From IMG/VR virus record IMGVR_UViG_3300023174_005338, positions 248,001 to 312,000 of that record: a stretch of 64,000 nucleotides of DNA. One strand, 5' to 3'. Under the pieces are notes generated by a model. That model saw only the letters and a list, made by a program, of their open reading frames with translations, did not search any database and had not been told where the DNA came from. Shown in pieces: positions 9,001-54,000 of this stretch. Positions within the stretch are counted from its first letter, which is position 1, and every line of letters begins with the position of its first letter. The position numbers and the translations under genes are program-made.

Positions 9001-12000
9001 TGTTGTTGTTCAAAGGATTGTTTGACAAATTTATGGGCACTTCATAGAAACCGGCCACGCTGACCTGATCACTCAGTACCGACACTTCGATCACGTCGCC
9101 GGGCGCATAGATAGTTAACAAATTGATTGTGGTGGTATTGGTACCAACCGTGTATTGATAATTGTCAGCGGACTGAAATTGTCCATTGATATAGATTTGT
9201 ACTGCCGGCACTGTTTGATTTTGATTCACTGCTACATCTAACAGCAGTGGATTTCCATCATAGCTAAACTGAAATTGTTGACGCACCAGGCTGGACGTGA
9301 CGGCTGTTTGCCATCCAATTTCTCTCTGAAAGTCAACGCGATTACTGTACTGTCTCACAAAACCTGTGCTCAAAGGCAAGGTTTGGCCACGGTTGTCTAT
9401 GGTATAGTTGAACGAATCTCGGTAGAAATTGTTGTCAAATACAATGTCACCAATGTTGGTAAGACTTAGGTAAGTTAAAGGAAAGCCCAATACCAAATCT
9501 GGATCGGCATTGCCAATGGCATAACTAAACAACGGACTTCCATTGAAATTAGAACTGGGGTATATGGCCTGATTGCCAAAACTTATGCCATTGCTGTCGT
9601 AGATGTCAAACAATGGTGGTTGGTTCACACTGATTTTTTGTTGTGCTTCAATCCACTCTACTCCATCATAGTAGTAAGATAATCCTTGTTCAGTGATACC
9701 ACTGAGTATGACCACAGTTTGGTCGACCAGTGCCGTGGCTATGGGAGTCAACACAATCACAGGTACATCTACTATGGTTGAGTCTTCGGCATTGGTATCG
9801 ATTATCACAAATTGCACCTGATAAACTGTGCGACGCACATCAATGTCTGTGTCTGCGGCAAAAATAATTGTGCTTCCATTGATCAGCGTGTAACCATCGA
9901 TGCTGTAGCCCAATGATCCATTTACATTGCTCAAGGCATCAGTCTGTGTGAAATCAATAATGTCTACTGGTGCCAGCGCCTGTGTGCCAAAATCAAACAA
10001 TCTTGTACCAGCGCGATATTCCAAGATTGGTCTACGGGCACGAAAATTGTTGTTCAAGACCGGAACAGTGTTGTTGTATTCTGCACTGGCAGTGATCACG
10101 TCAATGTGGAACCAACGATTGCTGCGGGTCCAGGCATTGAGATCTGGACTGGCACGGTTGATAGTCAAGTAATCAGGCACAAGGGGTTGATTGAGACTGC
10201 CATCAAAATTTCCAAAGTCATAGGGAGTGGTATCATAGGGAATGGTCAGGCTGTCTGTGTAAGTTTCAGGTGTGACATAGTTGGTCACCGGCAACAGTTG
10301 AATGGCTGTGCCTACCCCTTCCACATAGTATGTTTGATTTTGGTAAGTGGCAGGATATACATTGCCTCTAAATACTACCTTCATGCCGTTGCTGAACACG
10401 ACTCCATTGGGGCTAACGTAGTTGACCGATCCAATGATTTCATCAACATCAATGGTGTCGGACAGTTCCAGATCAATGAGATTAATGCGTCCAAAAATTT
10501 CTGGATCTGTGCCGTCTTGATAAAATAAAACATTTCTGTCGGCTGTCAACAAAGGAATTTGTTCAAAATATCCGGCGGCATTTTTGTACCAGCCGGTGCT
10601 GGAATATTCAGCGCCAAATCCCACTGCAAACTTGTTGTTGAGATCAACATTTTGTACAAATTGCAATGACATATAGGTACCACCACCCGCGGCAGTTAGA
10701 TACTGTATACGCCATACACTGTATTGTGTAGCTTGGTCTGTGATGTAGGTAGTTTGATCAAATGTTGTAGAATCAAAGGATCCTGTGCCGCTTTGTACAT
10801 TGCCCACATTAAGCAAAGGATCAAAGAATGTGGTCTGTTGCCAGCCGCCGGTCACAGGATTTGAATCTTGTGTGATAAATGCTATGGTGCGATTTTGTAA
10901 ATTTGTGATGCCATCAATGCCAGTGGGATTGGCCTCAAAGAATGGTTCTAAGAATTGATTGTTGATTTGATCAAACTGCAACGTGGTAATCAAATCCACC
11001 GTGCCAATGCTGGGCATGTTGAAGTAAAAATTCTGTGCGTCGGCCAAAGGCACATTAAAGGTTACTGTGCCAAGATCTTCACCGTTGTTGGTCACACCCA
11101 GTACATCTCTACTGCTGATGTTGGGAGTGGCAATTACTCGTCCGTCAATACCGGGGTCTGTTTGAATCCAAAATCCAGGACCTGTGCCCGGTGTGCCATC
11201 CACAATGTTGAGCTGGCCGCGCAGATTAAACTGCAGATCATTGGCGTAATACAGTGTGTCAGGAGCATCTTGTGGCACTGTGAATGTAATAAGTCCTGCA
11301 GCGGCTCCATTGTTGAATACGCCTTGGTTGTAGATGTCTGTGGTTCCGAGACTTGGAGCAGTCTTGATATAGAATGCCCAGGGAAAGGACTGAGTGAGAT
11401 TGAACACATAAGTATTGCCTCTGACCAGGGTCAAGGTGGGATTGGCAGAATAATCTATGTTCCAGCTGCTGGTATCATTGTTGGTCACTCGGAAATTTAC
11501 AGTTTCCTTGTTGTTCTGTGCCACATCAAAAGTATAGGTTCCGCCACGCACCAGTGTTATGGCGGGATTGTTGCCGGCCACGCCAGAAAAAGTATAGACT
11601 CCATTGGCTCGGGTTACCGTAAAATCATCGGTCAACGGAACCGAGGTGGCCGATACATCCACTGCCAATGGACCACCGGGCAACCAATAGTATTGTGCAT
11701 AGTTGACAAACTTGTCCAGTTCAACAAATGGATCCCAGGTATAGTAGTCGCTGGTGTACAATCTGTCAGCGTTGTTGGTAAACGCACCTTGTACCTGCAA
11801 GGCATCGTTGATGCCAGGATAGGTTATGGCATCAACTACTTTGCTGGTGTTGGCAGGATCAACTTGCACAACTCCAGGCTCGAGCTGATAGTCAGTGCGA
11901 GTTTTGGTAGGTTCTACCACGTACTGATCATTGGCATTGACTCCAGGACCAATACGTCGACCTATGAATCCTTGGGTCTGTGTGAATCTGGGATTTTGGA

Positions 12001-12094
12001 TCAGCTGATCCAGGGTGGCCGACAAAAATTGCTCGTTGATCGGAGTCTGGAATATTTCTGGTAGGAATTCTACGCTGCGGACTTGGCGGGCCAT
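1..12094 (-). CDS. Giant virion structural protein (baseplate-associated), at least 4,031 aa, C-terminus outside the window
   Basis: ATG at 12094 overlaps the gp6 stop (TAATG) and reads MARQVRSVEFLPEIFQTPINEQFLSATLDQLIQNP. The same frame is open at the window start (…GNNLVRSIKTTIRYDRYEYASDIVEWSYLVASYAEG). The ORF track lists no terminated ORF in this frame, consistent with an uninterrupted frame running off the edge. Composition is T/N/S/V-rich; it follows the baseplate wedge gene. Confidence 0.85.
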   Translation of the reverse strand, partial: MARQVRSVEFLPEIFQTPINEQFLSATLDQLIQNPRFTQTQGFIGRRIGPGVNANDQYVVEPTKTRTDYQLEPGVVQVDPANTSKVVDAITYPGINDALQVQGAFTNNADRLYTSDYYTWDPFVELDKFVNYAQYYWLPGGPLAVDVSATSVPLTDDFTVTRANGVYTFSGVAGNNPAITLVRGGTYTFDVAQNNKETVNFRVTNNDTSSWNIDYSANPTLTLVRGNTYVFNLTQSFPWAFYIKTAPSLGTTDIYNQGVFNNGAAAGLITFTVPQDAPDTLYYANDLQFNLRGQLNIVDGTPGTGPGFWIQTDPGIDGRVIATPNISSRDVLGVTNNGEDLGTVTFNVPLADAQNFYFNMPSIGTVDLITTLQFDQINNQFLEPFFEANPTGIDGITNLQNRTIAFITQDSNPVTGGWQQTTFFDPLLNVGNVQSGTGSFDSTTFDQTTYITDQATQYSVWRIQYLTAAGGGTYMSLQFVQNVDLNNKFAVGFGAEYSSTGWYKNAAGYFEQIPLLTADRNVLFYQDGTDPEIFGRINLIDLELSDTIDVDEIIGSVNYVSPNGVVFSNGMKVVFRGNVYPATYQNQTYYVEGVGTAIQLLPVTNYVTPETYTDSLTIPYDTTPYDFGNFDGSLNQPLVPDYLTINRASPDLNAWTRSNRWFHIDVITASAEYNNTVPVLNNNFRARRPILEYRAGTRLFDFGTQALAPVDIIDFTQTDALSNVNGSLGYSIDGYTLINGSTIIFAADTDIDVRRTVYQVQFVIIDTNAEDSTIVDVPVIVLTPIATALVDQTVVILSGITEQGLSYYYDGVEWIEAQQKISVNQPPLFDIYDSNGISFGNQAIYPSSNFNGSPLFSYAIGNADPDLVLGFPLTYLSLTNIGDIVFDNNFYRDSFNYTIDNRGQTLPLSTGFVRQYSNRVDFQREIGWQTAVTSSLVRQQFQFSYDGNPLLLDVAVNQNQTVPAVQIYINGQFQSADNYQYTVGTNTTTINLLTIYAPGDVIEVSVLSDQVSVAGFYEVPINLSNNPLNNNSDQFTLGTIRNHYTSIAENLIALSGPSIGANNTRDLGNIIPYGLQILQQSSPLTLTGYFMRDANYDIFASLAYNSAEYIKFKSQLLNAVTTFGISDYGNWTVAELLDRSIAQITVGRTNLNPFYWSDMLPTGTVFTSNSYTVNPITINTFNTVQTYDFSTSNYLGLCVYVNNILLTRDTGYVVSTEGPTLTILQTLAVGDVVTINEYADTAGNFVPNTPTKLGLYPKYEPRIFYDTNYVNPTLVIQGHDGSITTAFGDIRDQVLLEFEQRIFSNLKNDGNLPPLVAEDVIPGFFRTTDYSQAEVNQILGESFLSWVGANKLDYTSQTYVADNEFTYNYSQAGNRLDQQPLLGAWRGIYRYFYDTMSPNTTPWEMLGFSEQPEWWTDRYGPTPYTSDNLVLWGDLEAGLVADPVAPYVIPKYRRPGLTSVIPVGSQGELLPPFYSVMGAYNPQGFQKSWQVGDGGPVEASWWMSSSYPFAVMRLLILTRPAEFFSLFADRDLYKYSPEFDQYLYNGRYRIQPQNIEVYGNGVSKASYINWIVDYNQQLGIDSTDALTTDLANLDVRLCYRAASFIASQTLSMYLEKSSPNSENSSLLIPEESYNLLLYKNQPFNRISYSAVIVEVVEGGYTVYGYNATDPYFPTLVSRVTGLQQTLSGGNISVTVPSQYTSKLVQIPYGYTFTNLAGVVDFLLSYGEYLASQGLSFTAQENGYTLNWLQMAQEFLYFANQGWDTGTIINLNPSATQAASFRAGAVVDSIVTYTPENLILDQNRKAFDAKNLIIRRIGNTFTVNPAPGGSQTISYLQLKYTDYEDMIVLDNRTIFNDLIYNPTTAERQSRLRLSAATSTDWNGTLNAQGFILNQNNVVAWKPNTKYTKGDIVLYKNNYWQAANIVQPKSKFEYTDWLKSNYDRIEQGLLQNLATKADQLANSYDTQTANLNNDNDLLAFGLIGFQPRQYMVDLDLDDTSQVNLYQQFIKTKGTTKATDLFTQVDFNPLTAQYRILENWGILVGTYGANANRSWFEVVLNEAQLTSNPGTLQIIQPGESSDANQTVLLDNLWAESYKIPNTDILPTTYVTDSDTALPSAGYVNINDVDITVFNLNNPASIAASLNTVGNGTRIWVAQDNSFDWNIYQCAQIPGRLTQLTDNLNGTSRAQFSTTVDLAIGDLIIIRYFSDAVDGVYRVLSRPSIDTAVIQYEFVNTNQTTITGTGLVFYLQTMRVAQASDIVNLPYATQLVPGATVWVDNDGNGHWQVLEKTNPFAVIDTLTATSPEPNSLFGTSVSQSSSHYALLVGSPAANLGQGAVYTYRLGDTNDYVENTTLSLTATGTVGYGNSVDFGDRTWAVAGASASNSGAGYVTVLYLVPGSNNYIQTQLLVEPNENFAAIGFGTAVQISDNERWLYVSAPGANQLYAYGRVDVPRQSIVYTTDGTTATFVYSDSIEVDSTYPAQLLVTLDNVLLQPGTDYTLSGVVVQLLSTPSAGKTLIIARRQSVQLDFYNYFGVTQNSTTGSGTGAVFTVTNTRGLYNVTLTAPGTAYTVGEQLTISYTQVDPGGSAANNITVTVTQVVSGGITAFTYTGSAVNNTSVFSLTDYLYTADNYDSFTVQVNGVLQRAYIDYTFNTGTLTFLTVPAPQAIIQVESATVGAYWQYTATISANYIDNDAAMGTSLTVDQLGRQILAGAPNDSAPDAEGDVILNAGNVYAFDRGVVKYIISDPSQLTYSIPGSSADPVSVVLNNQYLTNTDQYIDGQFTVSGSDVVLSNSVTLTAGDTLEIETNQFQFVQKFSANTVIDESEFGQSVDICSNSCSVYVGAPLDSSATGVPQAGMVQRQVNQSRIYGITTSTVANPVLTAGDTIRINNQEVAVPNAPENNVAGLIAAINGPTPNIKPNIPNVVATASANATFTGDGSTKIYSIGNMYSSATAYNTVVYVNDVLQTEGVNYTYDNNELSTNYQSIIFVEAPALDSEIVVVSGRMTVSVINSAAAAIFNKLTVLPGLTADDSAIGTAFYDLGFTTYAYTQTIVSPNPTDFAQFGAAVAVNTGAENLVVGSPNGIVYEPTIFDAGETYFDDRSTTFFDSVANSGVVYTYDYLPSANTSLSNPGKFVFGQQVYTTALNTGDRFGSAVNYRSGRLLVGAPGNDLGDSSANYGSVSVLDNANDDAVWQVIHAQQPTVDVNLINSVYSYDKLLNSTQTYFDYIDPLQGKILGVARRNIDYIGAVDPASYNTGTIHNIGTSWGPAHEGEIWWDTNSVRFIDANQDNLIYASTRWGQVFPGSTIDIYQWTASSVPPANYVGPGTPFSTTSYTVHASIDNQGLLQTTYFFWVRGISTVATQARKTLSTTAIASYILNPAGSGLPYIAALTANAIALYNAGSLLSANNTILHVEYDRQIQGGTADVHQEYEFIPDGKPNAFLNANLYRKLLDSLSGTTTTGAVVPDPLLSPGMQYGVQFRPRQSMFENRFNALQNYLGRANTVLAQFPISETRNFNLLNSQEPIPSSVSGAWDFEVANLEVLSYQNLYVVPLGYRYLVTNDASQNGRWTIYQVNAGTQPGQRVLDLVQVQTYDTTLYWNYIDWYRPGYNSSIQPVATVANVAGLQTLNLQTAPVGSSVKVTANGQGKFEIYLRTDLGWDRVVLQDGTIEFSETLWNYALGGYGFDAQVFDGNYFDQAPNTETRYIVRAINEELFVDDLLIERNQSLILLFKFIYSEFGAPEWLIKTSYITVDHVIRGLLPYELFQPDNQTFVLDYLNEVKPYHVQNLQFNLIYDGIDLYAGALTDYDVPAYFNTTLDIPQFVSPVLTPYDYSNSVTQSFVSDASADAEIWLQRPWSDWFNNYGLSVQAITVIDTTTTYSAVPYITIGNEWTASTALALGDQVFYGNNLYTVTVAGTTGTNAPRFTSGSLANGTATLTYSGLRAQATAVLRANGTIATVTVTQPGTSYLTTPSIAVNDTNDSTANYGYGLVPVMGNNLVRSIKTTIRYDRYEYASDIVEWSYLVASYAEG

Positions 12095-29916: not shown

Positions 29917-31680
29917 ATGATTCAAATAAAAAATCTCACAGTAAAAAACTTTATGAGCGTGGGCAACGCCACGCAAGGCATCGACTTTGATCGACGCGAC
30001 TTGACACTTGTGTTGGGCGAGAACTTGGATCTTGGTGGCGACGGAAGCCGCAACGGCACAGGTAAAACTACTATAATCAATGCTCTTAGCTACAGCTTGT
30101 ATGGGCAAGCATTAAGTAACATCCGCAAGGACAACTTAGTCAACAAAACCAACAACAAAAACATGTTGGTCAGTTTGGATTTCAGTGTGGACGGCAAAGA
30201 TTACCGGATTGAACGAGGCCGTAAACCCAACCTGCTGAGATTCTTTGTAAACAATCAAGAGCAAGTGGTCACAGACGAAGCACAAGGCGACAGCCGAGAA
30301 ACACAGGATGCCATTGAACATACCTTGGGCCTCAGTCACGACATGTTCAAACACATTCTGGCACTCAACACTTACACAGAACCGTTTCTGAGTCTCAAAG
30401 CCACAGATCAAAGAACCATCATTGAACAACTCCTGGGCATAACCATGCTGAGCGAGCGTGCCGATCGAATCAAAGAACACAACAGATCCACCAAAGAAGC
30501 CATACAGCAAGAAGAATTCCGTATTCGAGCTGTTCAAGAAGCCAATAAAAGGATAGAAGAACAGATTGAGGCTTTACGACGTAGACAGACATTATGGGTG
30601 ACTAAACATGAAGAAGAGATTACCAAACTCGAAACCGCGCTCGAAGAACTCAAAAAGATTGACATTGAAGCCGAGATTGCGGCCCACAAGGCGCACAAAG
30701 TATGGGATCAGAAGCGCAAGGACCTTAACGACCTGGCTGGACAGATCTCCCGCACGAAGCTTGATAAGGACCGCGAGAACAAAAGCATTGAGAAGCTTGG
30801 CAAGGAGATTGCGACACTTGAAGATCACACATGTCACACTTGCGGGCAGGCTTTCCACGACCATAAGCACCAACAGGTCCTGGCGGGTAAGCAGGCTGAT
30901 CTGGCAAGAGCGCGAGAAGCGTGCCAAGAACATACACAGCTCCTTTCAGAACTCGAGACTGCCCACACAGCCTTGGGCACGTTAGGGCGACCACCTGCTA
31001 TGTTCTATGATAGTGAAGAGGATGCCATACAACATCGTAGCAGCATGGCTGCCTTGCAAACTCAATTGACAAACAAACAGGCCGAAACAGATCCCTACGG
31101 CGAGCAGATAGCGGACATGCAAGGTCAGGCTTTGCAGGTAGTAAGCTATGACACACTCAATGAGCTGACCAGACTTCAGGAACATCAAGACTTCTTGCTC
31201 AAACTTTTGACCAGCAAGGATTCATTCATACGCAAAAAAATCATTGAACAGAATTTGAGTTATTTGAATGCCAGACTCACACACTACCTGGATAGGATTG
31301 GCCTGCCGCATACCGTGGTGTTCCAGAACGATTTGACTGTGAGCATCGAGGAGCTGGGTCGTGAGCTGGACTTTGACAATTTGAGTCGTGGCGAACGCAA
31401 CAGATTGATCTTGAGCATGAGCTGGGCCTTTCGTGATGTGTTTGAAAGCCTATACCAGCCCATCAATGTGCTGTTCATAGACGAAATGATTGATTCGGGC
31501 CTGGACACACAGGGTGTAGAAAATGCTCTTGCGTTGCTGAAGCACATGAGCCGCGAACGGCACAAGAGTATTTGGTTGGTCAGCCACAGAGATGAGCTAG
31601 CCGGAAGAGTTGAAAACATACTCCGAGTGGTCAAAGAAGGCGGCTTTACCAGTTACAACACGGATGTAGAAATTGCGTAG
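29917..31680 (+). CDS. gp46: Recombination endonuclease ATPase subunit (Rad50/SbcC-like)
   Basis: KNFMSVGN, Walker A NGTGKT, zinc hook CHTC, signature LSRGE, Walker B LFIDE, H-loop VSH. Confidence 0.92.
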   Translation: MIQIKNLTVKNFMSVGNATQGIDFDRRDLTLVLGENLDLGGDGSRNGTGKTTIINALSYSLYGQALSNIRKDNLVNKTNNKNMLVSLDFSVDGKDYRIERGRKPNLLRFFVNNQEQVVTDEAQGDSRETQDAIEHTLGLSHDMFKHILALNTYTEPFLSLKATDQRTIIEQLLGITMLSERADRIKEHNRSTKEAIQQEEFRIRAVQEANKRIEEQIEALRRRQTLWVTKHEEEITKLETALEELKKIDIEAEIAAHKAHKVWDQKRKDLNDLAGQISRTKLDKDRENKSIEKLGKEIATLEDHTCHTCGQAFHDHKHQQVLAGKQADLARAREACQEHTQLLSELETAHTALGTLGRPPAMFYDSEEDAIQHRSSMAALQTQLTNKQAETDPYGEQIADMQGQALQVVSYDTLNELTRLQEHQDFLLKLLTSKDSFIRKKIIEQNLSYLNARLTHYLDRIGLPHTVVFQNDLTVSIEELGRELDFDNLSRGERNRLILSMSWAFRDVFESLYQPINVLFIDEMIDSGLDTQGVENALALLKHMSRERHKSIWLVSHRDELAGRVENILRVVKEGGFTSYNTDVEIA

Positions 31681-32539
31681 AATACGAGTCTTACACATTG
31701 AACCCACCGACGTTTGTCAGGCTGCATGCCCGTTGTGTGCCCGAGAGACTGACCCAAACTTTAATAAAAGTTTAAAGCATCATCTCAGAGTAGAGCACAT
31801 ACAAAAACATTTTTCAGAACAAGTAATTTCCAAACTGGATAAAATGTTCATGTGTGGCAATTATGGTGATCCGGCTGCAGGCTACTATACCATGGACATC
31901 TACAACCACTTTAGAAAAGTCAATCCAGAAATTGTGTTGGGTATGAACACCAATGGTGCTGTGCAAAGCACGTTCTTTTGGCATGCGTTGGGACGATTGT
32001 TCAATCAGCCCAAAGATTATTGTGTGTTTAGCATAGACGGATTAGAGGATACCAATCACGTTTATCGTAAAAATGTCAATTGGGCCAAGCTAATGAGCAA
32101 CGTTCAAGCCTACATTGCCGCAGGTGGAAGTGCCCATTGGGACATGCTGGTGTACAAACACAATCAACATCAAGTGGATGCTTGCCAGCAACTGGCTCGT
32201 GACATGGGATTCAAGTGGTTCCGTGCCAAGGTCAGCAAGCGTGGATTCACTGATCATTTAGAATTTCCCATCGGGTGGCAACCGCCTGCGGTCAAGGCGG
32301 GGCCCATCAAATGCCATGTGATTAATGAAAAAAGCATGTACATTGATGCGCAAGGTCGTGCCAGTGCCTGTTGCTGGCTTGGTGCCACGCAACAAGATTT
32401 TGTCAAAGATGATTTGGCAACTGTAAAATTAACTTGGAAAACAGACACACCCAATCCGGTGTGTGTCAGTGCTTGTTCCACAAACAAAAATAAAACCGTA
32501 TTCCAAGACCAATGGCAACGCGAGGTACAACTGTGTTAG
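31673..32539 (+). CDS. Radical SAM protein with a C-terminal Cys-rich (Twitch/SPASM-like) region
   Basis: CQAACPLC (CxxxCxxC), CGNYGDP, NTNG, FSIDG; C-terminal KC…ACCW…CVSAC; TTG start overlaps the gp46 end. Confidence 0.85.
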   Translation: MRRIRVLHIEPTDVCQAACPLCARETDPNFNKSLKHHLRVEHIQKHFSEQVISKLDKMFMCGNYGDPAAGYYTMDIYNHFRKVNPEIVLGMNTNGAVQSTFFWHALGRLFNQPKDYCVFSIDGLEDTNHVYRKNVNWAKLMSNVQAYIAAGGSAHWDMLVYKHNQHQVDACQQLARDMGFKWFRAKVSKRGFTDHLEFPIGWQPPAVKAGPIKCHVINEKSMYIDAQGRASACCWLGATQQDFVKDDLATVKLTWKTDTPNPVCVSACSTNKNKTVFQDQWQREVQLC

Positions 32540-33543
32540 CCACCTGGCATTTTCATATCGAAATCAGTTCAAAGTGTACCCTGCGTTGCCCACGCTGTGC
32601 CAGACAAGAGGTTCCCGACAGTTTAGTAAACACTGAACTGGATTTAGAATTTTTTAAAAGAAACTTTACCGCAGAGTTTGTTCTTGACAATGTAGAAAAG
32701 ATCACATTTTGTGGTGACGACGGTGATCCTATCTATGCTCACGACCTTATACCAGTGATTCAATACATCAAGTCAATCAAACCTGTTGAGATTGTAGTTG
32801 TCACAAATGGATCACACAAGAAACCAGAATGGTGGCGTGAACTTGGTGGCGTGCTTAGTGAGCAAGATACTGTACACTTTAGCATCGACGGTTGGGACTA
32901 CCCAAGCAACAATCTGTATCGTGTCAACAGTGATTTCAACAGTATTGTCGACGGAATCACTGCACTACGATCAACCTCTGAGTGCCACCTTGTGTGGGCT
33001 GCCATTGTCTTTGGGTTCAATGAACACCAACTGGGCGCTATGAAAAATCATGCACGTTTGCTAGATATGGATGTATTTCAACTTACCAAGAGCACCAAGT
33101 TTGGCTCCGTTTATCTCTCCTACGGTCCAATCGATGAGCTAGAGCCCAGCCGGCCGTTTGTCAGCAGTTCACACAGATTTGAGAGAGATGTTACACCGAT
33201 AAGCTCGCGTGGACTCAATTCACAGACAAACACCAAGAACATACAATTATACAAATCTGCTGTAGAGATCAACGGTGTAAAACCCCTGTGTGAAATTGGC
33301 AACAAAGGACTTTATATTGACGCCCAAGGTAGATTATTCCCTTGCTGTTGGGTAGCAAACCGCTACAGTCACAATTCAGAATGGAAAGCTATTGCTAACA
33401 AATTTGATTTGAATCGTCGCACACTGGCCGACGCTGTAACTGACGATTTTTGGTCAACAACATTTAAAACCTTTGGGTGGCAAGAGTGCCAGACTAAGTG
33501 TGTAGCGAGCAGGGTAAATGAAAAATATGCAACTGAGTGGTAA
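32533..33543 (+). CDS. Second radical SAM protein, paralogous to the upstream one
   Basis: CTLRCPRC, FCGDDGDP, VTNGS, FSIDG; C-terminal LC…PCCW…CQTKC. Probable GTG start at 32533; the track uses the ATG at 32512. Confidence 0.85.
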   Translation: MLATWHFHIEISSKCTLRCPRCARQEVPDSLVNTELDLEFFKRNFTAEFVLDNVEKITFCGDDGDPIYAHDLIPVIQYIKSIKPVEIVVVTNGSHKKPEWWRELGGVLSEQDTVHFSIDGWDYPSNNLYRVNSDFNSIVDGITALRSTSECHLVWAAIVFGFNEHQLGAMKNHARLLDMDVFQLTKSTKFGSVYLSYGPIDELEPSRPFVSSSHRFERDVTPISSRGLNSQTNTKNIQLYKSAVEINGVKPLCEIGNKGLYIDAQGRLFPCCWVANRYSHNSEWKAIANKFDLNRRTLADAVTDDFWSTTFKTFGWQECQTKCVASRVNEKYATEW

Positions 33544-33990: not shown

Positions 33991-33994
33991 ACTT

Positions 33995-34387
33995 AGATAG
34001 GCAACAACATGACTCTGCGGTAGGACTACCTACCCCCATTGAGGAACGGTGAGATACCCGGTCCAGATTCTTGGGTGTCAAAGGCAATTGCTAACTTAAG
34101 GCAACAAATGGTTTGAGCTCTGTGAAAAAGACACAACTCATGCTCATAGGACTTGGTTCTTCTCGGGTCACTAGGGTTCCGTTGATATGTGAAGCTTGAG
34201 TAGGGGGTACCGGTCAACCGCCTCCGCGTCGCGAGACAATCTCATTAGAAACGAAGTGACTGCTCCGACTCGGATAATGCGGCCTTTTTCACCCGGCAAC
34301 GGGTGAATTGTGACCACATGATCTGGATAATACGGAAAAAGAAATCATTGATGAGCGACAGCGAATCAATAGATCTCTAAGAGATCT
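33995..34387 (+). ncRNA. Candidate large structured non-coding RNA, family unrecognised, strand inferred
   Basis: About 400 nt without a credible ORF in a gene-dense genome; two GNRA-capped hairpins on the + strand and several 6-7-bp long-range complementarities (see findings). Confidence 0.55.
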
Positions 34388-34722
34388 CAGAACTGATCAG
34401 GAAAGTCTCGGAAAAGTGCGTGCTGAATGTTGCCACTCACAAACTGATTAAAACTTTTGTGTTTGGTTTCTAGTTCACCTTCAAGTGGTGCGACTCTTCG
34501 GAATGCCGCGTCCATTTGACCCATGTCCTTGAATTCCATTAGTATCATGAATTCAGGCATGTCTGCAATACTACGAAAACCCATCTTGCATCTAGTGATT
34601 CTATATGATTCCATTTTTCCTTCTGAGATCAAATGATCAAAGAAACTTTTCATTCCGTTGACCCAGTCCAGGTCTGAGATATTGCCTTCTTTGTCTGCCC
34701 AAATTGTATATAAGTCTGCCAT
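34387..34722 (-). CDS. DUF6614-like dimeric alpha/beta-barrel protein
   Basis: …HLISEGKMESYRITRCKMGF…EFMILMEFKDMGQMDAAF…LFRDFPD pattern; family recalled from memory. Confidence 0.5.
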   Translation of the reverse strand: MADLYTIWADKEGNISDLDWVNGMKSFFDHLISEGKMESYRITRCKMGFRSIADMPEFMILMEFKDMGQMDAAFRRVAPLEGELETKHKSFNQFVSGNIQHALFRDFPDQF

Positions 34723-35156
34723 TATTGTATAGGTCCTAAAATTTCAAAGCCTTCGAGGCCTTGTTTGTACAAGTGTGCTTGATCCAAGTACAAGTAGCTA
34801 AAACCGCGATCTCTGTAGATAGCACATTCGGTCTTCAAACTCTCAACCCCGAGTCTAGTTTTTGGATTGTGATATGTCCACGCAAACTGACTGGCCAATA
34901 CATTTTTATCATTCAGCCGCTTCATCAAACTAAAAGCCACCAGCTCATTGTGCTCTTTGTAGCCGATTACATCGGTCATGGCATCGGTGAACTGGCTGTC
35001 AAACAAGGGCATGACGCTGGCAAAGTGTTTGTAGATGCAGTAGGTCCTGTAGATGTCTTTGAGCTGTGCGATGTTGGGCTCACGTAGATATTCCCAGGCC
35101 ACTGTGGCCTTGTAGGTGGTTTTTCTCAAATCAATTCTAGCAAACTGATAGGTCAT
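34722..35156 (-). CDS. GNAT-fold protein resembling the C-terminal domain of Arg/Leu-tRNA-protein transferases (ATE1/Bpt)
   Basis: ELVAFSLM…SQFAWTYHNPKTRLGVESLKTECAIYRDRGFSYLYL parallels the ATE_C pattern (L.A….D…S.Y.F.DP…SLG..S.L.EI..A…G..Y.YL). Confidence 0.5.
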   Translation of the reverse strand: MTYQFARIDLRKTTYKATVAWEYLREPNIAQLKDIYRTYCIYKHFASVMPLFDSQFTDAMTDVIGYKEHNELVAFSLMKRLNDKNVLASQFAWTYHNPKTRLGVESLKTECAIYRDRGFSYLYLDQAHLYKQGLEGFEILGPIQ

Positions 35157-35656
35157 GTTCTGGGATCCTGTCTGTGCTGGAATAGTTCTTGCAGGTAATT
35201 TTCAGGCCAGGTCGCGTAAAATCCCTGACGTGCCATTGACCGTGCTTTTTGATCCAGGTCACTGAGACTCTGTACCAAGGCCAAGGCATAGGTACCTTGA
35301 TTCATGCTCACGCCGTTGACCATTTCTGGCAAGCCCGGATGATCCTCCAAGGCCAACAAGTCTTGGTTCAATAAAAATTCTTGGTTGGCCGAGTCAATGT
35401 GAACATGAAACTGCTCGGCAGTATAAGCTGTTGATTCATATACAAAAATTATGACACTTTTGGCAATGCCAGTCTGCGACACGACTTTCAAATCAAAATA
35501 AGGATTCATGCCCAGCCTGACTTCAAAGTCACGATCCAGCCGTGCCCGGCGGGCATACGGACACGGAGCCCAGCCGCCCAGGGCCGGATGTGGAACCTCC
35601 ACAAACGTGGCCATCCAGCGTTCAATGTCATAGGTAACAGTTTCTAAATTTAACAT
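35153..35656 (-). CDS. DUF1415-like protein
   Basis: ERWMATFVE…PCPYAR and LEDHP motifs parallel the DUF1415 W…V…CPFA and FHP motifs. Confidence 0.5.
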   Translation of the reverse strand: MLNLETVTYDIERWMATFVEVPHPALGGWAPCPYARRARLDRDFEVRLGMNPYFDLKVVSQTGIAKSVIIFVYESTAYTAEQFHVHIDSANQEFLLNQDLLALEDHPGLPEMVNGVSMNQGTYALALVQSLSDLDQKARSMARQGFYATWPENYLQELFQHRQDPRT

Positions 35657-35659
35657 TTT

Positions 35660-35896
35660 TTAAAAGAAAGGCAGGCCCGTCTTCTTTGTGGTTTCTAAGT
35701 TTTCTTTGATCAAGTTGCTGATAGTGTTGCGCTCTTGTACACTGAGATGTAGAGCTTGATCGTAGCTGATGCCGCCACGCATGTACCAGGCCACTTTGAT
35801 CGCTTCTTGTCTTATGTCCTGTGTTTCTTTGTCCATCTGATCCACGACTTTGGAAATCTGGTCAGAGTCCAAGACTAAGAGGCGGGCACGAAAAAA
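35660..35896 (-). CDS. Tail/baseplate assembly chaperone C-terminal frame (probable -1 frameshift extension of the upstream ORF)
   Basis: The frame is open across the slippery site: FFRARLLVLDSDQISKVVDQMDKETQDIRQEAIKVAWYMRGGISYDQALHLSVQERNTI…; internal ATG at 35836. Confidence 0.6.
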   Translation of the reverse strand, partial: FFRARLLVLDSDQISKVVDQMDKETQDIRQEAIKVAWYMRGGISYDQALHLSVQERNTISNLIKENLETTKKTGLPFF

Positions 35897-36708
35897 CTGG
35901 CCATGTCCAAGGTCAACACCTGCTCGTACTGGTGTTTGCAGGCCGTGCATTCCAGGTTGAGTGGTTGAAGTTCGCTTTGTTCACGCAGTCGCAACACATG
36001 ATCACGTATCTGATTGAACAGATCTCGATCGCAGTTTTTCAGGAATTCTTCAATGAAAGCTGGTTCTCGGACCAGGGCCTGTGGAGTTTTAATTGTGACA
36101 ATGCTGATGGCCAGGCTTCGCACAGTGATTTCAGTCAGCTGTCTGAATGCTTGGTTAAGGGCAGCCATCTTGTCGGCTTCAGATATTGTGCTGTCAGGTA
36201 TGACCTGCAACAGTTTTTGTTGTTCGTACTGCAATGCACTGTTGTCATTGAGATTTTTATAGCTCAACGGACGGAAATAGATCTCCAAATCGCCGTGTGC
36301 AATGTGTGCCGCGTAGTCAGGCGCTCGCAGGGCATCCAACATGGTTCTTAAATCTATGGTGCGTTCTGACGTGTCGTTACAGGCCGGGCACGTGGTTGCA
36401 AACTCCATGTCATGTCCGTAGCTGGCTATGCGTATGGCTATAAGGATGGTGTCTAGATCAATACCGGGCACTGCCCAGGCATCTCGGATGTTTGGCACAC
36501 AGCTCTGTATCACGTTGACAGTGGCCTGTCCGTTGAACAAGGCATCTGGTGTGCGATAGGTAATTTCGTCTATGGCAGTCATGGGATACACTGGCAATTC
36601 ACCATTGGCTGGCATGTTTAACGTGCCAGCAGGATAGTTCTGCCCGCCACTGGGCAACTTTATGTAGATGCTGGGTTGTCGGAAATACTGACTTAAAGGA
36701 TTGCTCAT
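35875..36708 (-). CDS. Baseplate hub assembly / tail assembly chaperone (T4 gp26/gp51-like)
   Basis: YIKLPSGG…VYPMTAIDEI…DLDTILIAIRIASYG…CPAC…CTAC; ends …SFFVPAS; adjacent to the tape measure gene. Confidence 0.7.
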   Translation of the reverse strand: MSNPLSQYFRQPSIYIKLPSGGQNYPAGTLNMPANGELPVYPMTAIDEITYRTPDALFNGQATVNVIQSCVPNIRDAWAVPGIDLDTILIAIRIASYGHDMEFATTCPACNDTSERTIDLRTMLDALRAPDYAAHIAHGDLEIYFRPLSYKNLNDNSALQYEQQKLLQVIPDSTISEADKMAALNQAFRQLTEITVRSLAISIVTIKTPQALVREPAFIEEFLKNCDRDLFNQIRDHVLRLREQSELQPLNLECTACKHQYEQVLTLDMASFFVPAS

Positions 36709-49800: not shown

Positions 49801-50841
49801 ATGGCAGTTAATTTAGTCAAAGGGCAAATACTTTCCAGCATTCTTGAACGCGATGGCATTGACATCAGCATAGCCAATGCCAATGTGGGTATCAATACCA
49901 ATTCGCCCACAGTCAGACTTGAAGTAGTTGGCAACGTAATAGTTGGAAATTTCAGCACAGCTGGCAATGTGGCCACAGGAAATCTGCTTACCAATAACCT
50001 GCTGTATGCCAATGGCACACCTTGGGATCTACAACAGCCAGCAGGCAACAACACAGAAATACAATTCAACAACAACAGCCAATTTGGCGCCAGTGCCAAC
50101 TTGACCTTTGATACCACGGCCAACTTGCTGACAGTAAATGCCACGGCCAACATAGCCAATCTCAATGTTGCTGGTAACACAAGCGTGGGCGGTAACATCA
50201 CAGGTGGCAATTTACTGACCAATGGCAATGTCAGTGCCACTGGCAACGTTACTGGCAATTATTTCTTTGGTACATTTGTTGGTAACATATCGGGCAATTT
50301 AACGGTACCTGGATCTAGCACACAGGTTATCTACAACTACAACGGAAACGCCGCAGCAAGCCCGGGGTTTACCTTTGACCAATCCTCAAATGCCGTGGTG
50401 GTTACCGGCAACGTGACAGCTGGCAATGTAAACACAGTTGGCAATGTCACAACTGGTAATTTAAACACAGTTGGCAATGTCACGGCTGGCAATGTCTTGG
50501 TTGGAAATATTCTTGTTCCTGCTGTGGGCAACATCAGTGCCGGTAACGTAAACATCAATAATCTGTCAGATCCAGCGGCCAATCAAGATGCAGCCACCAA
50601 ATACTATGTAGACCAAAGTATAAGCAATACAGCAGTTACCAATCAAATCTTGTACGGCAACAATGTGGCCACCACATTTACCTTAAATCGGAGTACCACC
50701 ACAGCTGCGGTCTTGATCATGCTCAACGGTATCACACAAGTGCCAGATCAGTCCTATGCCATGGTTCCTAGCCCTAGCACCAATTTGGTGTTTTCAGAAG
50801 CTCCTGAAACAGGCGATGTCATAGACATTAGATTCCTGTAA
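49801..50841 (+). CDS. Fibre-like structural protein
   Basis: GNVTAGN repeats, DPAANQDAATKYYVD, C-terminal LNGITQVP…LVFSEAP.TGDVIDIR. Confidence 0.65.
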   Translation: MAVNLVKGQILSSILERDGIDISIANANVGINTNSPTVRLEVVGNVIVGNFSTAGNVATGNLLTNNLLYANGTPWDLQQPAGNNTEIQFNNNSQFGASANLTFDTTANLLTVNATANIANLNVAGNTSVGGNITGGNLLTNGNVSATGNVTGNYFFGTFVGNISGNLTVPGSSTQVIYNYNGNAAASPGFTFDQSSNAVVVTGNVTAGNVNTVGNVTTGNLNTVGNVTAGNVLVGNILVPAVGNISAGNVNINNLSDPAANQDAATKYYVDQSISNTAVTNQILYGNNVATTFTLNRSTTTAAVLIMLNGITQVPDQSYAMVPSPSTNLVFSEAPETGDVIDIRFL

Positions 50842-51091
50842 AAATATCCCTGCTACGTCACGGATTTTTTGCTGAGAAATAAATACAGTATCCTTCCAAC
50901 AGACCACTGCTGTCTACCCAGCAACACCGTCTCTCCAGAGCGAATAGCTCCAAAAAATCGTGTTGCAATATCCAAAATATCCGGACTCTGGTAAATACAT
51001 CATAGCCCGTGAATTTTCACGAGCTTAAAATTTAAGGTTGATGACATTGAGTCATCAACAGTGTTGTAAAAAGGCAATCGGAGATAAAAAA

Positions 51092-54000
51092 ATGCCAGTC
51101 ACACGAATTAATAACAATCAAGTCACAGACGCTTCAGCAGGCAATACCATTGTTGGTATCAACGCAGGCACCAAACTGCAAAATTACTCGATCACTGCTA
51201 CCAAGATCGCCAACAACTTGACCTATGGTTCGGATTTGACTATCACAGGTAATTTGACCGTCCAAGGCAATACCACAGCCATTGACACCACGACAACTAC
51301 CATTGAAGATCCGTTGTTGTTGTTGGCCTCAACACAAACAGGAGCCCCATCAGTAGACATTGGTTATATTGGCGAGCGCGGCACCAGCGAAAATATTGCA
51401 TTTGTATGGGACGAAAGTGCCAGCGAATTTGTTACGGCTTTTACCAGCACAACTGATTCCAACACAACCATAACTATCACCAGCTATGCCAATGCTCGCG
51501 TGGGCAACATGGTAGTAGGTGGCACTACCAGTTTATCTGGCAACGTGATTGGCACAGCAAACTTCACAGGCAACGTTAATGCAGGCAACGTGAGTGCAGT
51601 TGGCACTATGAGAGCTGCTTCAACTGTGGGCGGTGTGATAACCGGTTCGAGTGCAAGTGTCACAGGTGGAGTCACTGCCGCATCGGTTGCAGGTGGAGTC
51701 ATTACAGGTACAAGTACAAGTGTCACTGGCACACAAACAGCTGCGAGTACAGTGGGTGGAGTCATAACTGGCACAAGCGCAAGTGTCACAGGTGGAGTCA
51801 CTGCCGCATCAGTGGCAGGTGGCGTTATCACCGGAACTTCTACTTCAGTAACAGGAACACAAACCGCCGCCTCAACAGTGGGTGGCGTCATAACCGGTTC
51901 GAGTGCAAGTGTCACAGGTGGAGTCACTGCCGCATCGGTTGCAGGTGGCGTTATCACCGGAACTTCTACTTCTGTAACTGGCACACAAACTGCTGCTTCG
52001 ACAGTGGGTGGTGTAATCACCGGAACTTCTACTTCTGTAACTGGCACACAAACCGCCGCCTCAACAGTGGGTGGTGTTATTACTGGTTCCAATGTCAGTG
52101 TCTCTGGCAACGTTGTTGCTGCAGGGAACGTAAGTGCCGCTTGGTTGATTGGTAACATACAAGGTTCAGTGACATCACCTGGTGCCAACACACAGATCTT
52201 GTTCAACGACAGCGGAGTGGCCAATGCCACTGGCGGATTCACATTCAACAAAACATCAAACTTGGTCACTGTAGGTGGCAACGTCAACGCAACCAATTTC
52301 AATGGCAATGTGTTTGGCACAAGTGTCAGTGCAAGTGGTACGGTAACAGCTGCCTCAACTGTGGGTGGAGTTATCACAGGTACATCAACTTCTGTAACTG
52401 GCACACAAACTGCTGCTAGTACAGTGGGCGGTGTGATTACAGGTTCAAGTTCAAGTGTCACAGGAACACAAACAGCTGCCTCAACAGTGGGTGGCGTAAT
52501 CACCGGAAGTTCTACTTCCGTAACTGGTAGTCAAACAGCTGCCTCCACAGTGGGCGGCGTAATCACTGGATCAAGTGTCAGTGTCACAGGCACAGCCACT
52601 GCGGCCTCAACTGCGGGCGGTGTGATCACTGGATCAACCATCAGTACCACAGGCAACATCACAGGTCCCAATGTCAATGCAGCACAACTTTACAATGCCA
52701 CTGCGGTCACGGTCAAAGCCGGCACAGGCAACATTAATCTTGATACCACTTCAGGCAACATCGTGGTCAACAATACCTACATCAACGGTGTACAATTAAA
52801 CCCAGTACAGAACTCGGACGTGGCATCTAAGTATTATGTTGACCTCCAGGCTTCAACAGCATTGACCTTCCACTCAGCAGTGCAAGCGGCCACCACAACG
52901 ACCCTGGCCACAACCACGGGTGGTACTATAACCTACGCACAACCCAATGGTGTTGCCAATGGCGTTGGTGCTACGTTAACTACAACTGGCTCGTTCAACC
53001 TCATCGACACAGCCAACGTTCAAACCGTGGGCACAAGAATCTTGGTCAAGAACGAAGGCAATGGTGTATTCAACGGCGTTTACACCTGGAGCAATGCCAC
53101 AGTGATCACACGTGCCACAGATGCTGACGTTTACGGACCCAACGATGCAGAAGAGCTCAGCCTCAACGACTATTTCTTTGTGGCTGGCGGCAACGTCAAC
53201 GTGGGATCTGCCTGGGTGGTTGATGCTCCACAAGGAGTCATCACATTTGGCACTAGCAACATCCAATTTGCCCAGTTCAGCCAAGCCCAGATTTATTCAG
53301 CCAATACCTCAGCTGGTTTGAGCCTAATAGGCACAGTGTTCTCAGCCAAGGTCGACAACAATACCACGGCCTTTGACGGACAAGGCAATATTTCAGTCAA
53401 AGCTGGCGCAAACCTGACCACACCCAACATTGGTGCTGCCACAGGTACAAGTTTAAGCGTCACTGGCACAGTCACAGCCGCATCAACCGTGGGTGGAGTC
53501 ATAACTGGCACAAGCGCAAGTGTCACAGGTGGCGTCACAGCCGCATCGGTGGCAGGTGGTGTGATAACAGGTACAAGTACAAGTGTCACTGGCACACAAA
53601 CAGCTGCGAGTACAGTGGGTGGAGTCATAACTGGCACAAGCGCAAGTGTCACAGGTGGAGTCACTGCCGCATCAGTGGCAGGTGGCGTTATAACAGGTAC
53701 ATCAACAAGTGTCACTGGCTCACAAACAGCAGCCTCAACAGTGGGTGGTGTGATTACGGGTACAAGCGTCAGCGTTTCTGGCAACGTAACAGCTGGCAAC
53801 ACCAACAGCAACTTGTATGGAACCACAGTCAGTGCCAGTGGCACTGTGACTGCTGCTAGTACTGTGGGTGGAGTAATCACAGGAACTTCTACGTCTGTAA
53901 CCGGCACACAAACTGCCGCGAGTACAGTGGGTGGTGTAATTACTGGATCAAGTGTGTCAGTCACAGGTGGTGTAACAGCCGCTTCAGTGGCAGGTGGAGT

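What the first reader, a model, noticed from the sequence alone, without database searches (positions are those of the whole stretch)
34387..35656. Coupled trio: DUF1415-like, minimal aminoacyl-tRNA-protein-transferase-like, DUF6614-like
Seen in sequence: three tightly overlapping genes (ATGA and TAATG junctions) follow the tail-chaperone genes. The middle one resembles only the C-terminal GNAT domain of ATE1/Bpt. Established: those enzymes transfer Arg or Leu from tRNA to protein N-termini to create N-degrons. Inference: the trio may be a phage system for tRNA-dependent aminoacylation of proteins or small molecules, for example redirecting host proteolysis.
Basis: inference. Interest (0 to 1): 0.6.

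Follow-up and report, generated by a model that had tools for sequence, protein, structure and literature searches.

The report
Phage arginine-chemistry gene cassette
A giant freshwater T4-like phage carries three tightly coupled genes: a likely haem enzyme, a stripped-down tRNA-dependent amino-acid transferase and a small unknown protein. They most likely build or decorate an arginine-derived compound, a kind of chemistry not so far described in phages.

Summary
Three minus-strand genes (35656-35153, 35156-34722, 34722-34387) overlap by ATGA and TAATG. They are under strong purifying selection and keep their order in 80 of 80 related phage contigs.

- **Gene 2 (144 aa).** It is a stand-alone Ate1/Bpt-type ATE_C lobe (profile against solved Ate1, E 1e-7). 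It keeps the counterparts of K. lactis Ate1 Trp260, Glu277, Tyr303 and Lys304. It lacks the whole ATE_N acceptor pocket.
- **Gene 1 (167 aa).** It is more than "DUF1415-like". Its model matches only AglA, a thiolate-haem guanidine N-hydroxylase (Z 7.5), and it shares the Cys-Pro haem motif of the DUF6875/P422 family.
- **Gene 3.** It is DUF6614 and is specific to this lineage.

The evolutionary core is the gene 1 plus gene 2 pair. An arginine-type amidinotransferase gene sits at varying positions inside the cassette in many relatives.

The argolaphos pathway is a worked precedent. There, an Arg-tRNA-dependent ligase (AglC) acts first and AglA hydroxylates its product.

I therefore favour tRNA-dependent arginylation plus oxidation of an amine substrate, probably a small molecule. 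Nothing has been tested biochemically.

The parts
35153..35656 (-). Gene 1 (P0001, 167 aa): DUF1415/DUF6875-like protein with the AglA-type 'sandwich' fold. Invariant Cys32 (Pro33 in 15 of 16) plus Asp105-His106-Pro107. Candidate thiolate-haem oxygenase.
   Evidence: The model has pLDDT 95. The only standout among solved folds is AglA 9ub3_A (Z 7.5, 148 residues aligned, next best 3.9). TM is 0.82 to DUF1415/DUF6875 clusters. hhalign against a bacterial P422-like protein carrying RLGDVCPFA gives probability 84%, E 8e-6. It also matches phrog_28122 at 6e-11.
34722..35156 (-). Gene 2 (P0002, 144 aa): stand-alone Ate1/Bpt-type ATE_C GNAT lobe. Candidate aminoacyl-tRNA (probably arginyl-tRNA) transferase without an ATE_N domain.
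   Evidence: The profile matches K. lactis and yeast Ate1 at E 1e-7 to 5e-6. The model has pLDDT 93. It superposes on the second lobe of MprF (Z 15.2), FemX (14.3) and Sba18 (13.0). Pfam ATE_C hits occur on relatives. W93, E110, Y130 and K131 are kept in 36, 33, 36 and 35 of 37 sequences.
34387..34722 (-). Gene 3 (P0003, 111 aa): DUF6614 protein. It is the best conserved of the three in this lineage, and its role is unknown.
   Evidence: PF20319 is found on all 120 listed homologues and on the neighbours in L001 and L083. The nearest other clusters are DUF4286, DUF6974 and EthD, at lead level only. Amino-acid identity is 68-96% across loci.
35660..35836 (-). Small upstream ORF (58 aa as called in the relative L001). 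Its stop lies 3 nt before the start of gene 1, so it belongs to the same tightly packed transcription unit.
   Evidence: No family match was found.
35875..36708 (-). T4-type baseplate hub gene at the head of the same-strand gene run.
   Evidence: PF12322 T4_baseplate is found on the homologue, and phrog_150 'baseplate hub' matches at 1.5e-13.

Best explanation
The cassette is a small phage-borne pathway for arginine-type chemistry on an amine-bearing substrate.

- Gene 2 takes an aminoacyl group, most likely arginine, from a host aminoacyl-tRNA and joins it to an amine.
- Gene 1, a thiolate-haem oxygenase of the AglA/P422 kind, oxidises the same substrate or product. The likeliest reaction is N-hydroxylation of a guanidino or other nitrogen, with electrons from a host ferredoxin or reductase.
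- In many relatives an arginine:X amidinotransferase in the same cassette adds or supplies a guanidino group.
- The DUF6614 protein is a lineage-specific helper of unknown role.

The acceptor is more likely a small molecule (a free amine, amino acid or polyamine) than a protein N-terminus.

Shown here: family, fold, residue conservation and gene linkage. Inferred: haem binding, arginine as the donor, the order of the steps and the nature of the acceptor.
For: (1) Gene 2 is an Ate1/Bpt-family catalytic lobe. The profile matches Ate1 at E 1e-7.
- The counterparts of klAte1 Lys304 (catalytic), Tyr303 (hydroxyl essential), Trp260 (tRNA side) and Glu277 (binds the Arg moiety; Gln in Leu-using Bpt) are K131, Y130, W93 and E110.
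- These are kept in 35, 36, 36 and 33 of 37 family members.

(2) Gene 1 has the AglA fold as its only clear match among solved structures (Z 7.5 against 3.9 for the next).
- It keeps an invariant Cys32, followed by Pro in 15 of 16 sequences, that aligns with the RxGxVCP haem motif of a bacterial P422-like protein.
- AglA and the P422 enzymes are thiolate-haem hydroxylases of arginine or tryptophan.

(3) The pair is kept with a 4-nt overlap or a 4-nt gap in 5 verified distant contig groups out of 8 examined (37-45% identity for gene 2). A sixth, without DNA, shows the same layout.

(4) A 375-377 aa AGAT/HsvA/SxtG-like amidinotransferase sits tightly packed at four different positions in relatives:
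- between genes 1 and 2;
- between genes 2 and 3;
- after gene 3;
- before gene 2.
It also lies after gene 2 in marine lineages. The window's own genome holds an intact paralogue elsewhere.

(5) There is a worked precedent. AglC with ArgRS, tRNA, Arg and ATP makes AMPn-Arg, which AglA then N-hydroxylates. That cluster lists a YqcI/YcgG protein beside GNAT-type 'aminoacyl tRNA ligases'.

(6) Bacterial DUF6875 proteins are fused or adjacent to amino-acid-ligase-type ATP-grasp genes.
Against: - There is no biochemical evidence at all.
- Gene 2 is only one lobe of what is a two-lobe enzyme in every characterised aminoacyl-tRNA transferase, so it may need a partner or a dimer, or may be inactive alone.
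- The Arg of the P422 RxGxVCP motif, which holds a haem propionate, is absent from gene 1. Sequence similarity to P422 covers only 38 columns.
- The donor pocket is a hybrid (A88, S106, E110, L122, against S/S/E/Y in Ate1 and A/A/Q/L in Bpt), so arginine is not certain.
- AglC belongs to PF13480 or COG3146 and not to ATE_C proper.
- The window's own cassette lacks the amidinotransferase.
- Two distant gene 2 relatives have other upstream genes.
- The cassette sits in a baseplate operon, an odd place for a metabolic pathway.
- The phage encodes no tRNA-Arg.
Confidence: 0.45

Rival explanations
1. This is the N-degron reading. Gene 2 adds a residue to protein N-termini so that the phage's own ClpS-ClpA-ClpP, or the host's, degrades chosen proteins. 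Gene 1 prepares or gates the acceptor by oxidation or haem sensing, as oxygenases and haem do for eukaryotic Ate1.
For: - Every characterised Ate1/Bpt member acts on protein N-termini.
- Gene 2 keeps Ate1-specific residues not found in FemX-type enzymes (Trp260 and the Tyr303 hydroxyl).
- The same 337-kb genome encodes ClpS (78 bits), ClpA (797 bits), ClpP (305 bits, above its 249-bit cut-off), a second ClpP-like gene and a tmRNA.
- ClpS is present in 4 of 4 near-complete relatives.
- Longer (254 aa) phage relatives of gene 2 lie beside a ClpA-like gene.
- Ate1 is haem-regulated through Cys-Pro motifs.
Against: - The ATE_N domain is absent. It carries the Zn/Fe-S cysteines and the Arg80/Tyr25/Tyr87 pocket that reads the acidic N-terminal residue.
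- The Clp genes lie 146 to 230 kb away in the genome.
- Amidinotransferases, the recurrent cassette members, are small-molecule enzymes.
- Relatives of gene 1 act on free amino acids.
- In bacteria an N-terminal Arg would need a further Leu/Phe transfer before ClpS could read it, and the phage has no Aat.
Confidence: 0.2
2. The genes are neighbours without a joint pathway. Gene 2 would be a non-catalytic or differently acting single GNAT lobe, for example a tRNA-binding or anti-defence protein, and gene 1 would be an unrelated accessory gene.
For: - Gene 1 relatives occur alone in cultured phages (HMO-2011, S-SCSM2R, CRP-345, CRP-810).
- Two gene 2 relatives have other upstream partners.
- A DUF6614-predicted ORF was reported with anti-Druantia activity in a preprint.
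- Single-lobe aminoacyl-tRNA transferases are unknown.
Against: - The catalytic Lys and Tyr and the tRNA-side Trp are kept almost without exception under dN/dS 0.065.
- The ATGA coupling of the pair persists down to 37-45% identity.
- The amidinotransferase is inserted repeatedly inside the cassette and not beside it.
Confidence: 0.17
3. Gene 2 is an ordinary acyl-CoA-dependent GNAT acetyl- or acyltransferase.
For: The fold also superposes on the second lobes of the acyl-CoA enzymes VipF (Z 14.3) and N-myristoyltransferase (Z 13.9).
Against: Sequence profiles find only Ate1 among solved proteins at significant E. The next hit, an acetyltransferase, has E 0.3. The conserved motifs are those of ATE_C (LG..S, YK, GFE). 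Pfam calls on relatives are ATE_C.
Confidence: 0.06

Closest known systems
Argolaphos pathway pair AglC + AglA (Streptomyces monomycini)
   Same: A tRNA-dependent arginyl transferase of the GNAT/Fem-like superfamily is paired with a YqcI/YcgG-type thiolate-haem enzyme that N-hydroxylates the guanidino group of the product. The gene 1 model matches the AglA structure (Z 7.5).
   Different: AglC-type enzymes are about 340-360 aa and belong to PF13480 or COG3146, not to a 144-aa ATE_C lobe. AglA is 243-274 aa and a YqcI/YcgG member, whereas gene 1 is 167 aa and nearer to DUF1415/DUF6875. The bacterial cluster makes a phosphonate, and no phosphonate genes are seen here. This cassette is in a phage.
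Ate1 (eukaryotes) and Bpt (bacteria) aminoacyl-tRNA-protein transferases
   Same: The C-terminal catalytic GNAT lobe is homologous (E 1e-7). The counterparts of Lys304, Tyr303, Trp260 and Glu277 are conserved.
   Different: There is no ATE_N domain, no metal-binding cysteines and no acidic-N-terminus pocket. The protein is 144 aa, against about 235-250 aa for Bpt and about 500 aa for Ate1. NCBIfam Bpt models do not reach it.
Cytochrome P422 (DUF6875) and YqcI/YcgG thiolate-haem enzymes
   Same: The predicted sandwich fold is shared. An invariant Cys, followed by Pro in 15 of 16 sequences and then [YF]-A, lies in the position of the haem ligand motif.
   Different: The motif Arg is missing and the motif is one residue shorter. 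The protein is shorter. Haem binding is untested. Pfam models hit only 11-23% of members in the nearest clusters.
AGAT-family amidinotransferases (AGAT, HsvA, SxtG, StrB1)
   Same: The extra cassette gene in relatives matches these at 5e-10 to 7e-6, with the C-terminal GG-x-HC catalytic-Cys region.
   Different: It is not present inside the window's own cassette. The window genome's copy lies elsewhere, shares 32-38% identity and reads GGISCC. Its acceptor is unknown.

Membership tests
Ate1/Bpt aminoacyl-tRNA-protein transferases (ATE_C + ATE_N) | ATE_C GNAT lobe detectable by sequence | tested here: met
   The family profile matches klAte1 at E 1.1e-7 and yeast Ate1 at 5e-6. Pfam PF04377 is called on relatives.
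Ate1/Bpt aminoacyl-tRNA-protein transferases (ATE_C + ATE_N) | Catalytic Lys (klAte1 Lys304) and the adjacent Tyr303 | tested here: met
   K131 is kept in 35 of 37 sequences and Y130 in 36 of 37.
Ate1/Bpt aminoacyl-tRNA-protein transferases (ATE_C + ATE_N) | ATE_N domain with four metal-binding Cys and the Arg80/Tyr25/Tyr87 acceptor pocket | tested here: not met
   The protein starts where ATE_N ends. Even the 225-270 aa relatives lack the cysteines.
Ate1/Bpt aminoacyl-tRNA-protein transferases (ATE_C + ATE_N) | Acidic residue in the donor pocket (Arg-specific Ate1) versus Gln (Leu-specific Bpt) | tested here: inconclusive
   E110 aligns with Glu277 and is kept in 33 of 37 sequences. The other pocket positions (A88, L122) resemble Bpt.
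Ate1/Bpt aminoacyl-tRNA-protein transferases (ATE_C + ATE_N) | Transfer from aminoacyl-tRNA to a protein N-terminus | not testable with these tools
   This needs an enzyme assay.
Thiolate-haem YqcI/YcgG - P422 (DUF6875) - DUF1415 superfamily | Sandwich fold of AglA | tested here: met
   The match to 9ub3_A has Z 7.5, 148 residues aligned and rmsd 3.8, with the next chain at 3.9. TM is 0.82 to DUF1415/DUF6875 models. By the tool's own note, Z values of this size are moderate evidence only.
Thiolate-haem YqcI/YcgG - P422 (DUF6875) - DUF1415 superfamily | Conserved axial Cys in an RxGxVCP-type motif | tested here: inconclusive
   Cys32 is kept in 16 of 16 sequences and Pro33 in 15 of 16, and they align with the VCPFA of a bacterial member. 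The motif Arg is absent and the spacing differs by one residue.
Thiolate-haem YqcI/YcgG - P422 (DUF6875) - DUF1415 superfamily | Haem binding and oxygenase activity | not testable with these tools
   This needs spectroscopy and an assay.
DUF6614 (PF20319) | Match to the Pfam model | tested here: met
   The precomputed PF20319 hit is present on all 120 listed homologues and on syntenic neighbours.
Acyl-CoA GNAT acetyltransferases | Sequence match to acetyltransferase families or to the CoA-binding motif | tested here: not met
   No acetyltransferase family was found at significant E. Only the fold is similar, to the second lobes of VipF and NMT.

The most novel reading that the evidence does not exclude
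The pair is a split, oxygenase-coupled aminoacyl transferase that makes N-degrons. Gene 1 would oxidise or gate a protein N-terminus and gene 2 would arginylate it. This would feed a complete phage-encoded ClpS-ClpA-ClpP system, making it a viral counterpart of the eukaryotic oxidation-dependent Arg/N-degron branch.
Probability: 0.12. Interest if true: 0.85.

Novelty: new variant of a known kind. Interest (0 to 1): 0.62.

Why it matters
If the cassette works as proposed, abundant freshwater and marine T4-like phages divert host aminoacyl-tRNA into non-ribosomal chemistry during infection. The gene 2 family has thousands of members in metagenomes (2,787 clusters at E <= 0.01). The product would be either an arginine-derived, possibly N-hydroxylated, metabolite or tagged proteins.

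That would add a new class of phage auxiliary function. It would give the smallest known aminoacyl-tRNA transferase, useful for asking what the second lobe of these enzymes is needed for. It would also extend the newly recognised thiolate-haem 'sandwich' enzymes to viruses. The same genome's ClpS/ClpA/ClpP/tmRNA set makes it a good system for testing whether phages run their own N-degron pathway.

Tried and rejected
- **Complex prediction.** The gene 1 plus gene 2 job gave 'no answer' (score 0.01 against a mark of 0.32). It is not evidence either way.
- **Split tandem-GNAT idea.** I asked whether gene 1 supplies the missing first lobe. It is rejected, because gene 1 has no GNAT-like fold.
- **Arg7 of gene 2 as klAte1 Arg80.** Rejected, because Arg80 lies before the Cys95/Cys96 pair, in the part that gene 2 lacks.
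- **Inserts as homing endonucleases.** Wrong: the ~1.1-kb inserts are amidinotransferase genes.
- **phrog_3577 as an ATP-grasp ligase.** This recurrent neighbour got no support from the PDB profile search or hhalign.
- **The 69-aa ORF beside the long-form relative as ClpS.** No similarity was found.
- **Family libraries on the three proteins themselves.** They gave almost nothing. Single-sequence PDB searches were blank.
- **Other collections.**
  - Cultured phages hold no relative of gene 2.
  - Bacterial genomes hold no close relative of gene 2.
  - The gene 1 profile hit 1 of 401 Pseudomonadota genomes.
- **Signals in the DNA.** No Rfam family and no convincing promoter or terminator was found. 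The window holds no tRNA.
- **Expression.** No RNA sequencing run holds the region, so expression could not be checked.
- **Literature.** Searches for phage arginyltransferase, ClpS or N-degron found nothing. The key argolaphos paper (PMC9284158) is not held.
Full report
**Setting**

The window is bases 248001-312000 of a 337,119-bp virus record with direct terminal repeats and 46% G+C. Its neighbours in the window and in a syntenic 342-kb contig are T4-type genes: portal, baseplate hub, a gp46-like SMC/AAA ATPase and a SegE-like GIY-YIG endonuclease. This is therefore a T4-like jumbo phage. The DNA recurs in freshwater and lake metagenomes of 13 studies, and no RNA run holds it.

**The observation**

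Three minus-strand ORFs occupy 35656..35153 (167 aa, P0001), 35156..34722 (144 aa, P0002) and 34722..34387 (111 aa, P0003).
- The junctions read ATGA and TAATG.
- The first gene starts three bases after a small ORF that follows the baseplate-hub gene, so five genes are packed head to tail.
- Against related loci the median dN/dS is 0.13, 0.065 and 0.07, with dS near saturation.
- All 80 IMG/VR loci retrieved with the middle protein (72-90% identity) carry homologues of the first two genes in the same order, and the third wherever the contig extends far enough. Where the third was missed, the contig ends or an inserted gene intervenes.

**The middle gene**

Family libraries are silent on the protein itself. 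The other evidence agrees on its family.
- The nearest Atlas clusters are viral. Of their members, 10-21% are called PF04377 ATE_C.
- The word search finds 2,787 relatives.
- The exhaustive search finds 116 cluster representatives. These include 225-270 aa proteins whose C-terminal part aligns with the query and which weakly match NCBIfam Bpt ('arginyltransferase') models.
- A 37-sequence profile hits only Ate1 among solved proteins at significant E. K. lactis Ate1 scores 1.1e-7 and yeast Ate1 5e-6. The next hit, an acetyltransferase, is at 0.3.
- The AlphaFold model (pLDDT 93) superposes on the second lobe of two-lobe acyl or aminoacyl transferases:

| Structure | Z |
|---|---|
| MprF | 15.2 (139 residues, 2.7 A) |
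| FemX | 14.3 |
| VipF | 14.3 |
| N-myristoyltransferase | 13.9 |
| Sba18 | 13.0 |

I mapped the profile alignment onto the mutational study of K. lactis Ate1. The PDB chain carries four extra N-terminal residues.

| klAte1 residue | Role | P0002 residue | Kept in family |
|---|---|---|---|
| Lys304 | catalytic | K131 | 35 of 37 |
| Tyr303 | hydroxyl essential | Y130 | 36 of 37 |
| Trp260 | tRNA side | W93 | 36 of 37 |
| Glu277 | holds the arginine side chain | E110 | 33 of 37 |

Leu-using Bpt has Gln at the Glu277 position. The other donor-pocket positions are mixed (A88, S106, L122).

The ATE_N part is absent. It holds the four metal-binding cysteines and the Arg80/Tyr25/Tyr87 pocket for the acceptor's acidic N-terminal residue. 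Even the longer relatives lack the cysteines.

So the protein is a member of the ATE_C domain family with intact donor-side chemistry. It is not a full Ate1/Bpt, and it is a single lobe where every characterised enzyme has two.

**The first gene**

'DUF1415-like' is right but understates it.
- The nearest named clusters carry PF07209 DUF1415 and PF21780 DUF6875 in 11-23% of members.
- The model (pLDDT 95) matches their predicted structures at TM 0.82. It matches a 750-aa ATP-grasp+DUF6875 fusion at TM 0.66.
- Foldseek finds nothing in the PDB.
- The Foldseek-independent search over about 48,000 representative PDB chains gives one outlier, AglA 9ub3_A, with Z 7.5, 148 residues aligned and the next chain at 3.9.
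- AglA is a YqcI/YcgG thiolate-haem enzyme that hydroxylates a guanidino nitrogen, with Cys44 as axial ligand.
- DUF6875 has been renamed cytochrome P422. It is a thiolate-haem family acting on tryptophan, with the motif RxGxVCP.
- In the phage family Cys32 is invariant and Pro33 is kept in 15 of 16, as are Ala35, Asp105-His106-Pro107 and Asn119.
- A bacterial protein carrying RLGDVCPFA, flanked by an ATP-grasp-like gene, aligns with the phage profile over this region (hhalign probability 84%, E 8e-6).

The motif arginine is missing, and haem binding is inferred, not shown.

**The third gene**

It is DUF6614 by Pfam on every homologue. It is the best conserved of the three here. No solved relative appears by sequence. 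Atlas leads point to DUF4286, DUF6974 and EthD-like small proteins. I could not fold it.

**What travels together**

In eight more distant contig groups (37-45% identity for gene 2) the results were as follows.
- A gene 1 homologue (phmmer 1e-14 to 1e-39) lies directly upstream in five groups. It overlaps gene 2 by four bases in four of them and ends four bases before it in the fifth.
- A sixth group, without DNA, has the same layout.
- Two groups have other upstream genes.

DUF6614 is present in only one of them. The third gene elsewhere is an amidinotransferase, a cupin followed by a QueE-like radical SAM gene, or phrog_3577.

The ~1.1-kb gaps seen inside the trio in close relatives hold a 375-377 aa amidinotransferase gene. 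It matches AGAT, HsvA, SxtG and StrB1 at 5e-10 to 7e-6 and has the GG-x-HC catalytic region. It is packed without spacers at four positions:
- between genes 1 and 2 (four loci);
- between genes 2 and 3 (nine loci);
- after gene 3;
- before gene 2.

The window's genome carries an intact paralogue at about 226.9-227.9 kb (32-38% identity by alignment). Gene 1 relatives also occur without gene 2 in cultured marine phages.

**Mechanism**

Three enzyme types recur together:
- an aminoacyl-tRNA transferase lobe with an arginine-type acidic pocket;
- a haem enzyme whose closest solved relative hydroxylates arginine guanidino groups;
- an enzyme that uses arginine as amidino donor.

A characterised pathway uses the first two in sequence. 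In argolaphos biosynthesis AglC, with ArgRS, tRNA, arginine and ATP, makes aminomethylphosphonyl-arginine, and AglA then hydroxylates it. The cluster table lists the YqcI/YcgG protein beside GNAT-type 'aminoacyl tRNA ligases'.

I therefore favour tRNA-dependent arginylation plus oxidation of an amine substrate, more likely a small molecule than a protein. My confidence is 0.45. The order of the steps, the donor, the acceptor and the role of DUF6614 are all inferences.

**The N-degron rival**

It deserves weight. The same genome encodes the following:
- ClpS (78 bits);
- a 758-aa ClpA (797 bits);
- ClpP (305 bits, above the 249-bit cut-off), and a second ClpP-like gene;
- a ClpX-like gene;
- DnaJ-, Hsp20- and bS21-like genes;
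- a tmRNA.

ClpS is in 4 of 4 near-complete relatives. A long-form relative of gene 2 lies beside a ClpA-like gene in another phage-like contig. Against this reading, the acceptor pocket is missing, the Clp genes are far away, there is no Aat, and the amidinotransferase link points elsewhere. I give it 0.2.

**Novelty**

No cultured phage record holds gene 2, and the literature searches found no description. The parts belong to known families, and the pairing has a bacterial precedent. The single-lobe architecture, the viral setting and the cassette composition are new. I rate it a new variant of a known kind.

Noticed in passing
own genome, outside the window: G000:C1:52335-52643 (ClpS), about 134349-136625 (ClpA), 72822-73403 and 69914-70432 (ClpP and ClpP-like), about 50310-51315 (ClpX-like): The phage encodes a full Clp proteolysis set including the N-degron adaptor ClpS. 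A DnaJ-like gene lies just upstream of ClpA, and Hsp20/IbpA-like and ribosomal bS21-like genes lie next to ClpS. ClpS is also in 4 of 4 near-complete relatives.
   Followed up: partly
own genome, outside the window: G000:C1:196894-197230 and 196326-205977: ARAGORN finds a phage-encoded tmRNA (tag ANASNDETFALAA) and five tRNAs (Met, Cys, Trp, Glu, Thr). There is no tRNA-Arg.
   Followed up: no
window 2-12094 (-): A very long open frame of at least 4,031 aa runs off the window's start, followed by an ORF of 1,144 aa. It was not examined.
   Followed up: no
window 31673-32539 and 32512-33543 (+): Two overlapping radical SAM genes (weak matches to SPASM/twitch-type maturases) lie directly after the gp46-like ATPase gene and converge on the cassette. 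A convergent radical SAM gene also follows the gene 2 relative P0133.
   Followed up: partly
window 33991-34386: A stretch of about 400 bp without a long ORF lies between the converging SegE-like gene and gene 3. It holds no tRNA and no Rfam match, and only a weak terminator-like hairpin at 34267-34252.
   Followed up: partly
L092:3225-5765 and L093: A 254-aa long-form relative of gene 2 (Pfam ATE_C) lies next to a 499-aa ClpA-like protein (N-domain plus one AAA module) and a 69-aa ORF. The contig is phage-like and also carries DNA polymerase III alpha and RNase T genes.
   Followed up: partly
L087:3039-3674 and L112:2543-3199: An unknown protein family (phrog_3577, about 210-218 aa) neighbours gene 2 relatives in two unrelated contigs, once downstream and once upstream with a 4-nt overlap.
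   Followed up: partly
L103, L104 (contigs of 148 and 183 kb), L105, L106: Close copies of the cassette lie on contigs binned into MAGs labelled Haliscomenobacter, Legionella and Bacteroidales. These are probably phage contigs caught in the bins, and at most a weak hint about the host.
   Followed up: no
literature, preprint 10.1101/2024.04.14.589459: [quoted passage not shown] Its relation to gene 3 was not tested.
   Followed up: no
L111:385-2759 (a Pseudomonadota genome): A bacterial P422/DUF6875-like gene (RLGDVCPFA) sits between an ATP-grasp-like gene and a metallo-beta-lactamase/flavodiiron-like gene. This echoes the ATP-grasp+DUF6875 fusions seen in the Atlas.
   Followed up: partly
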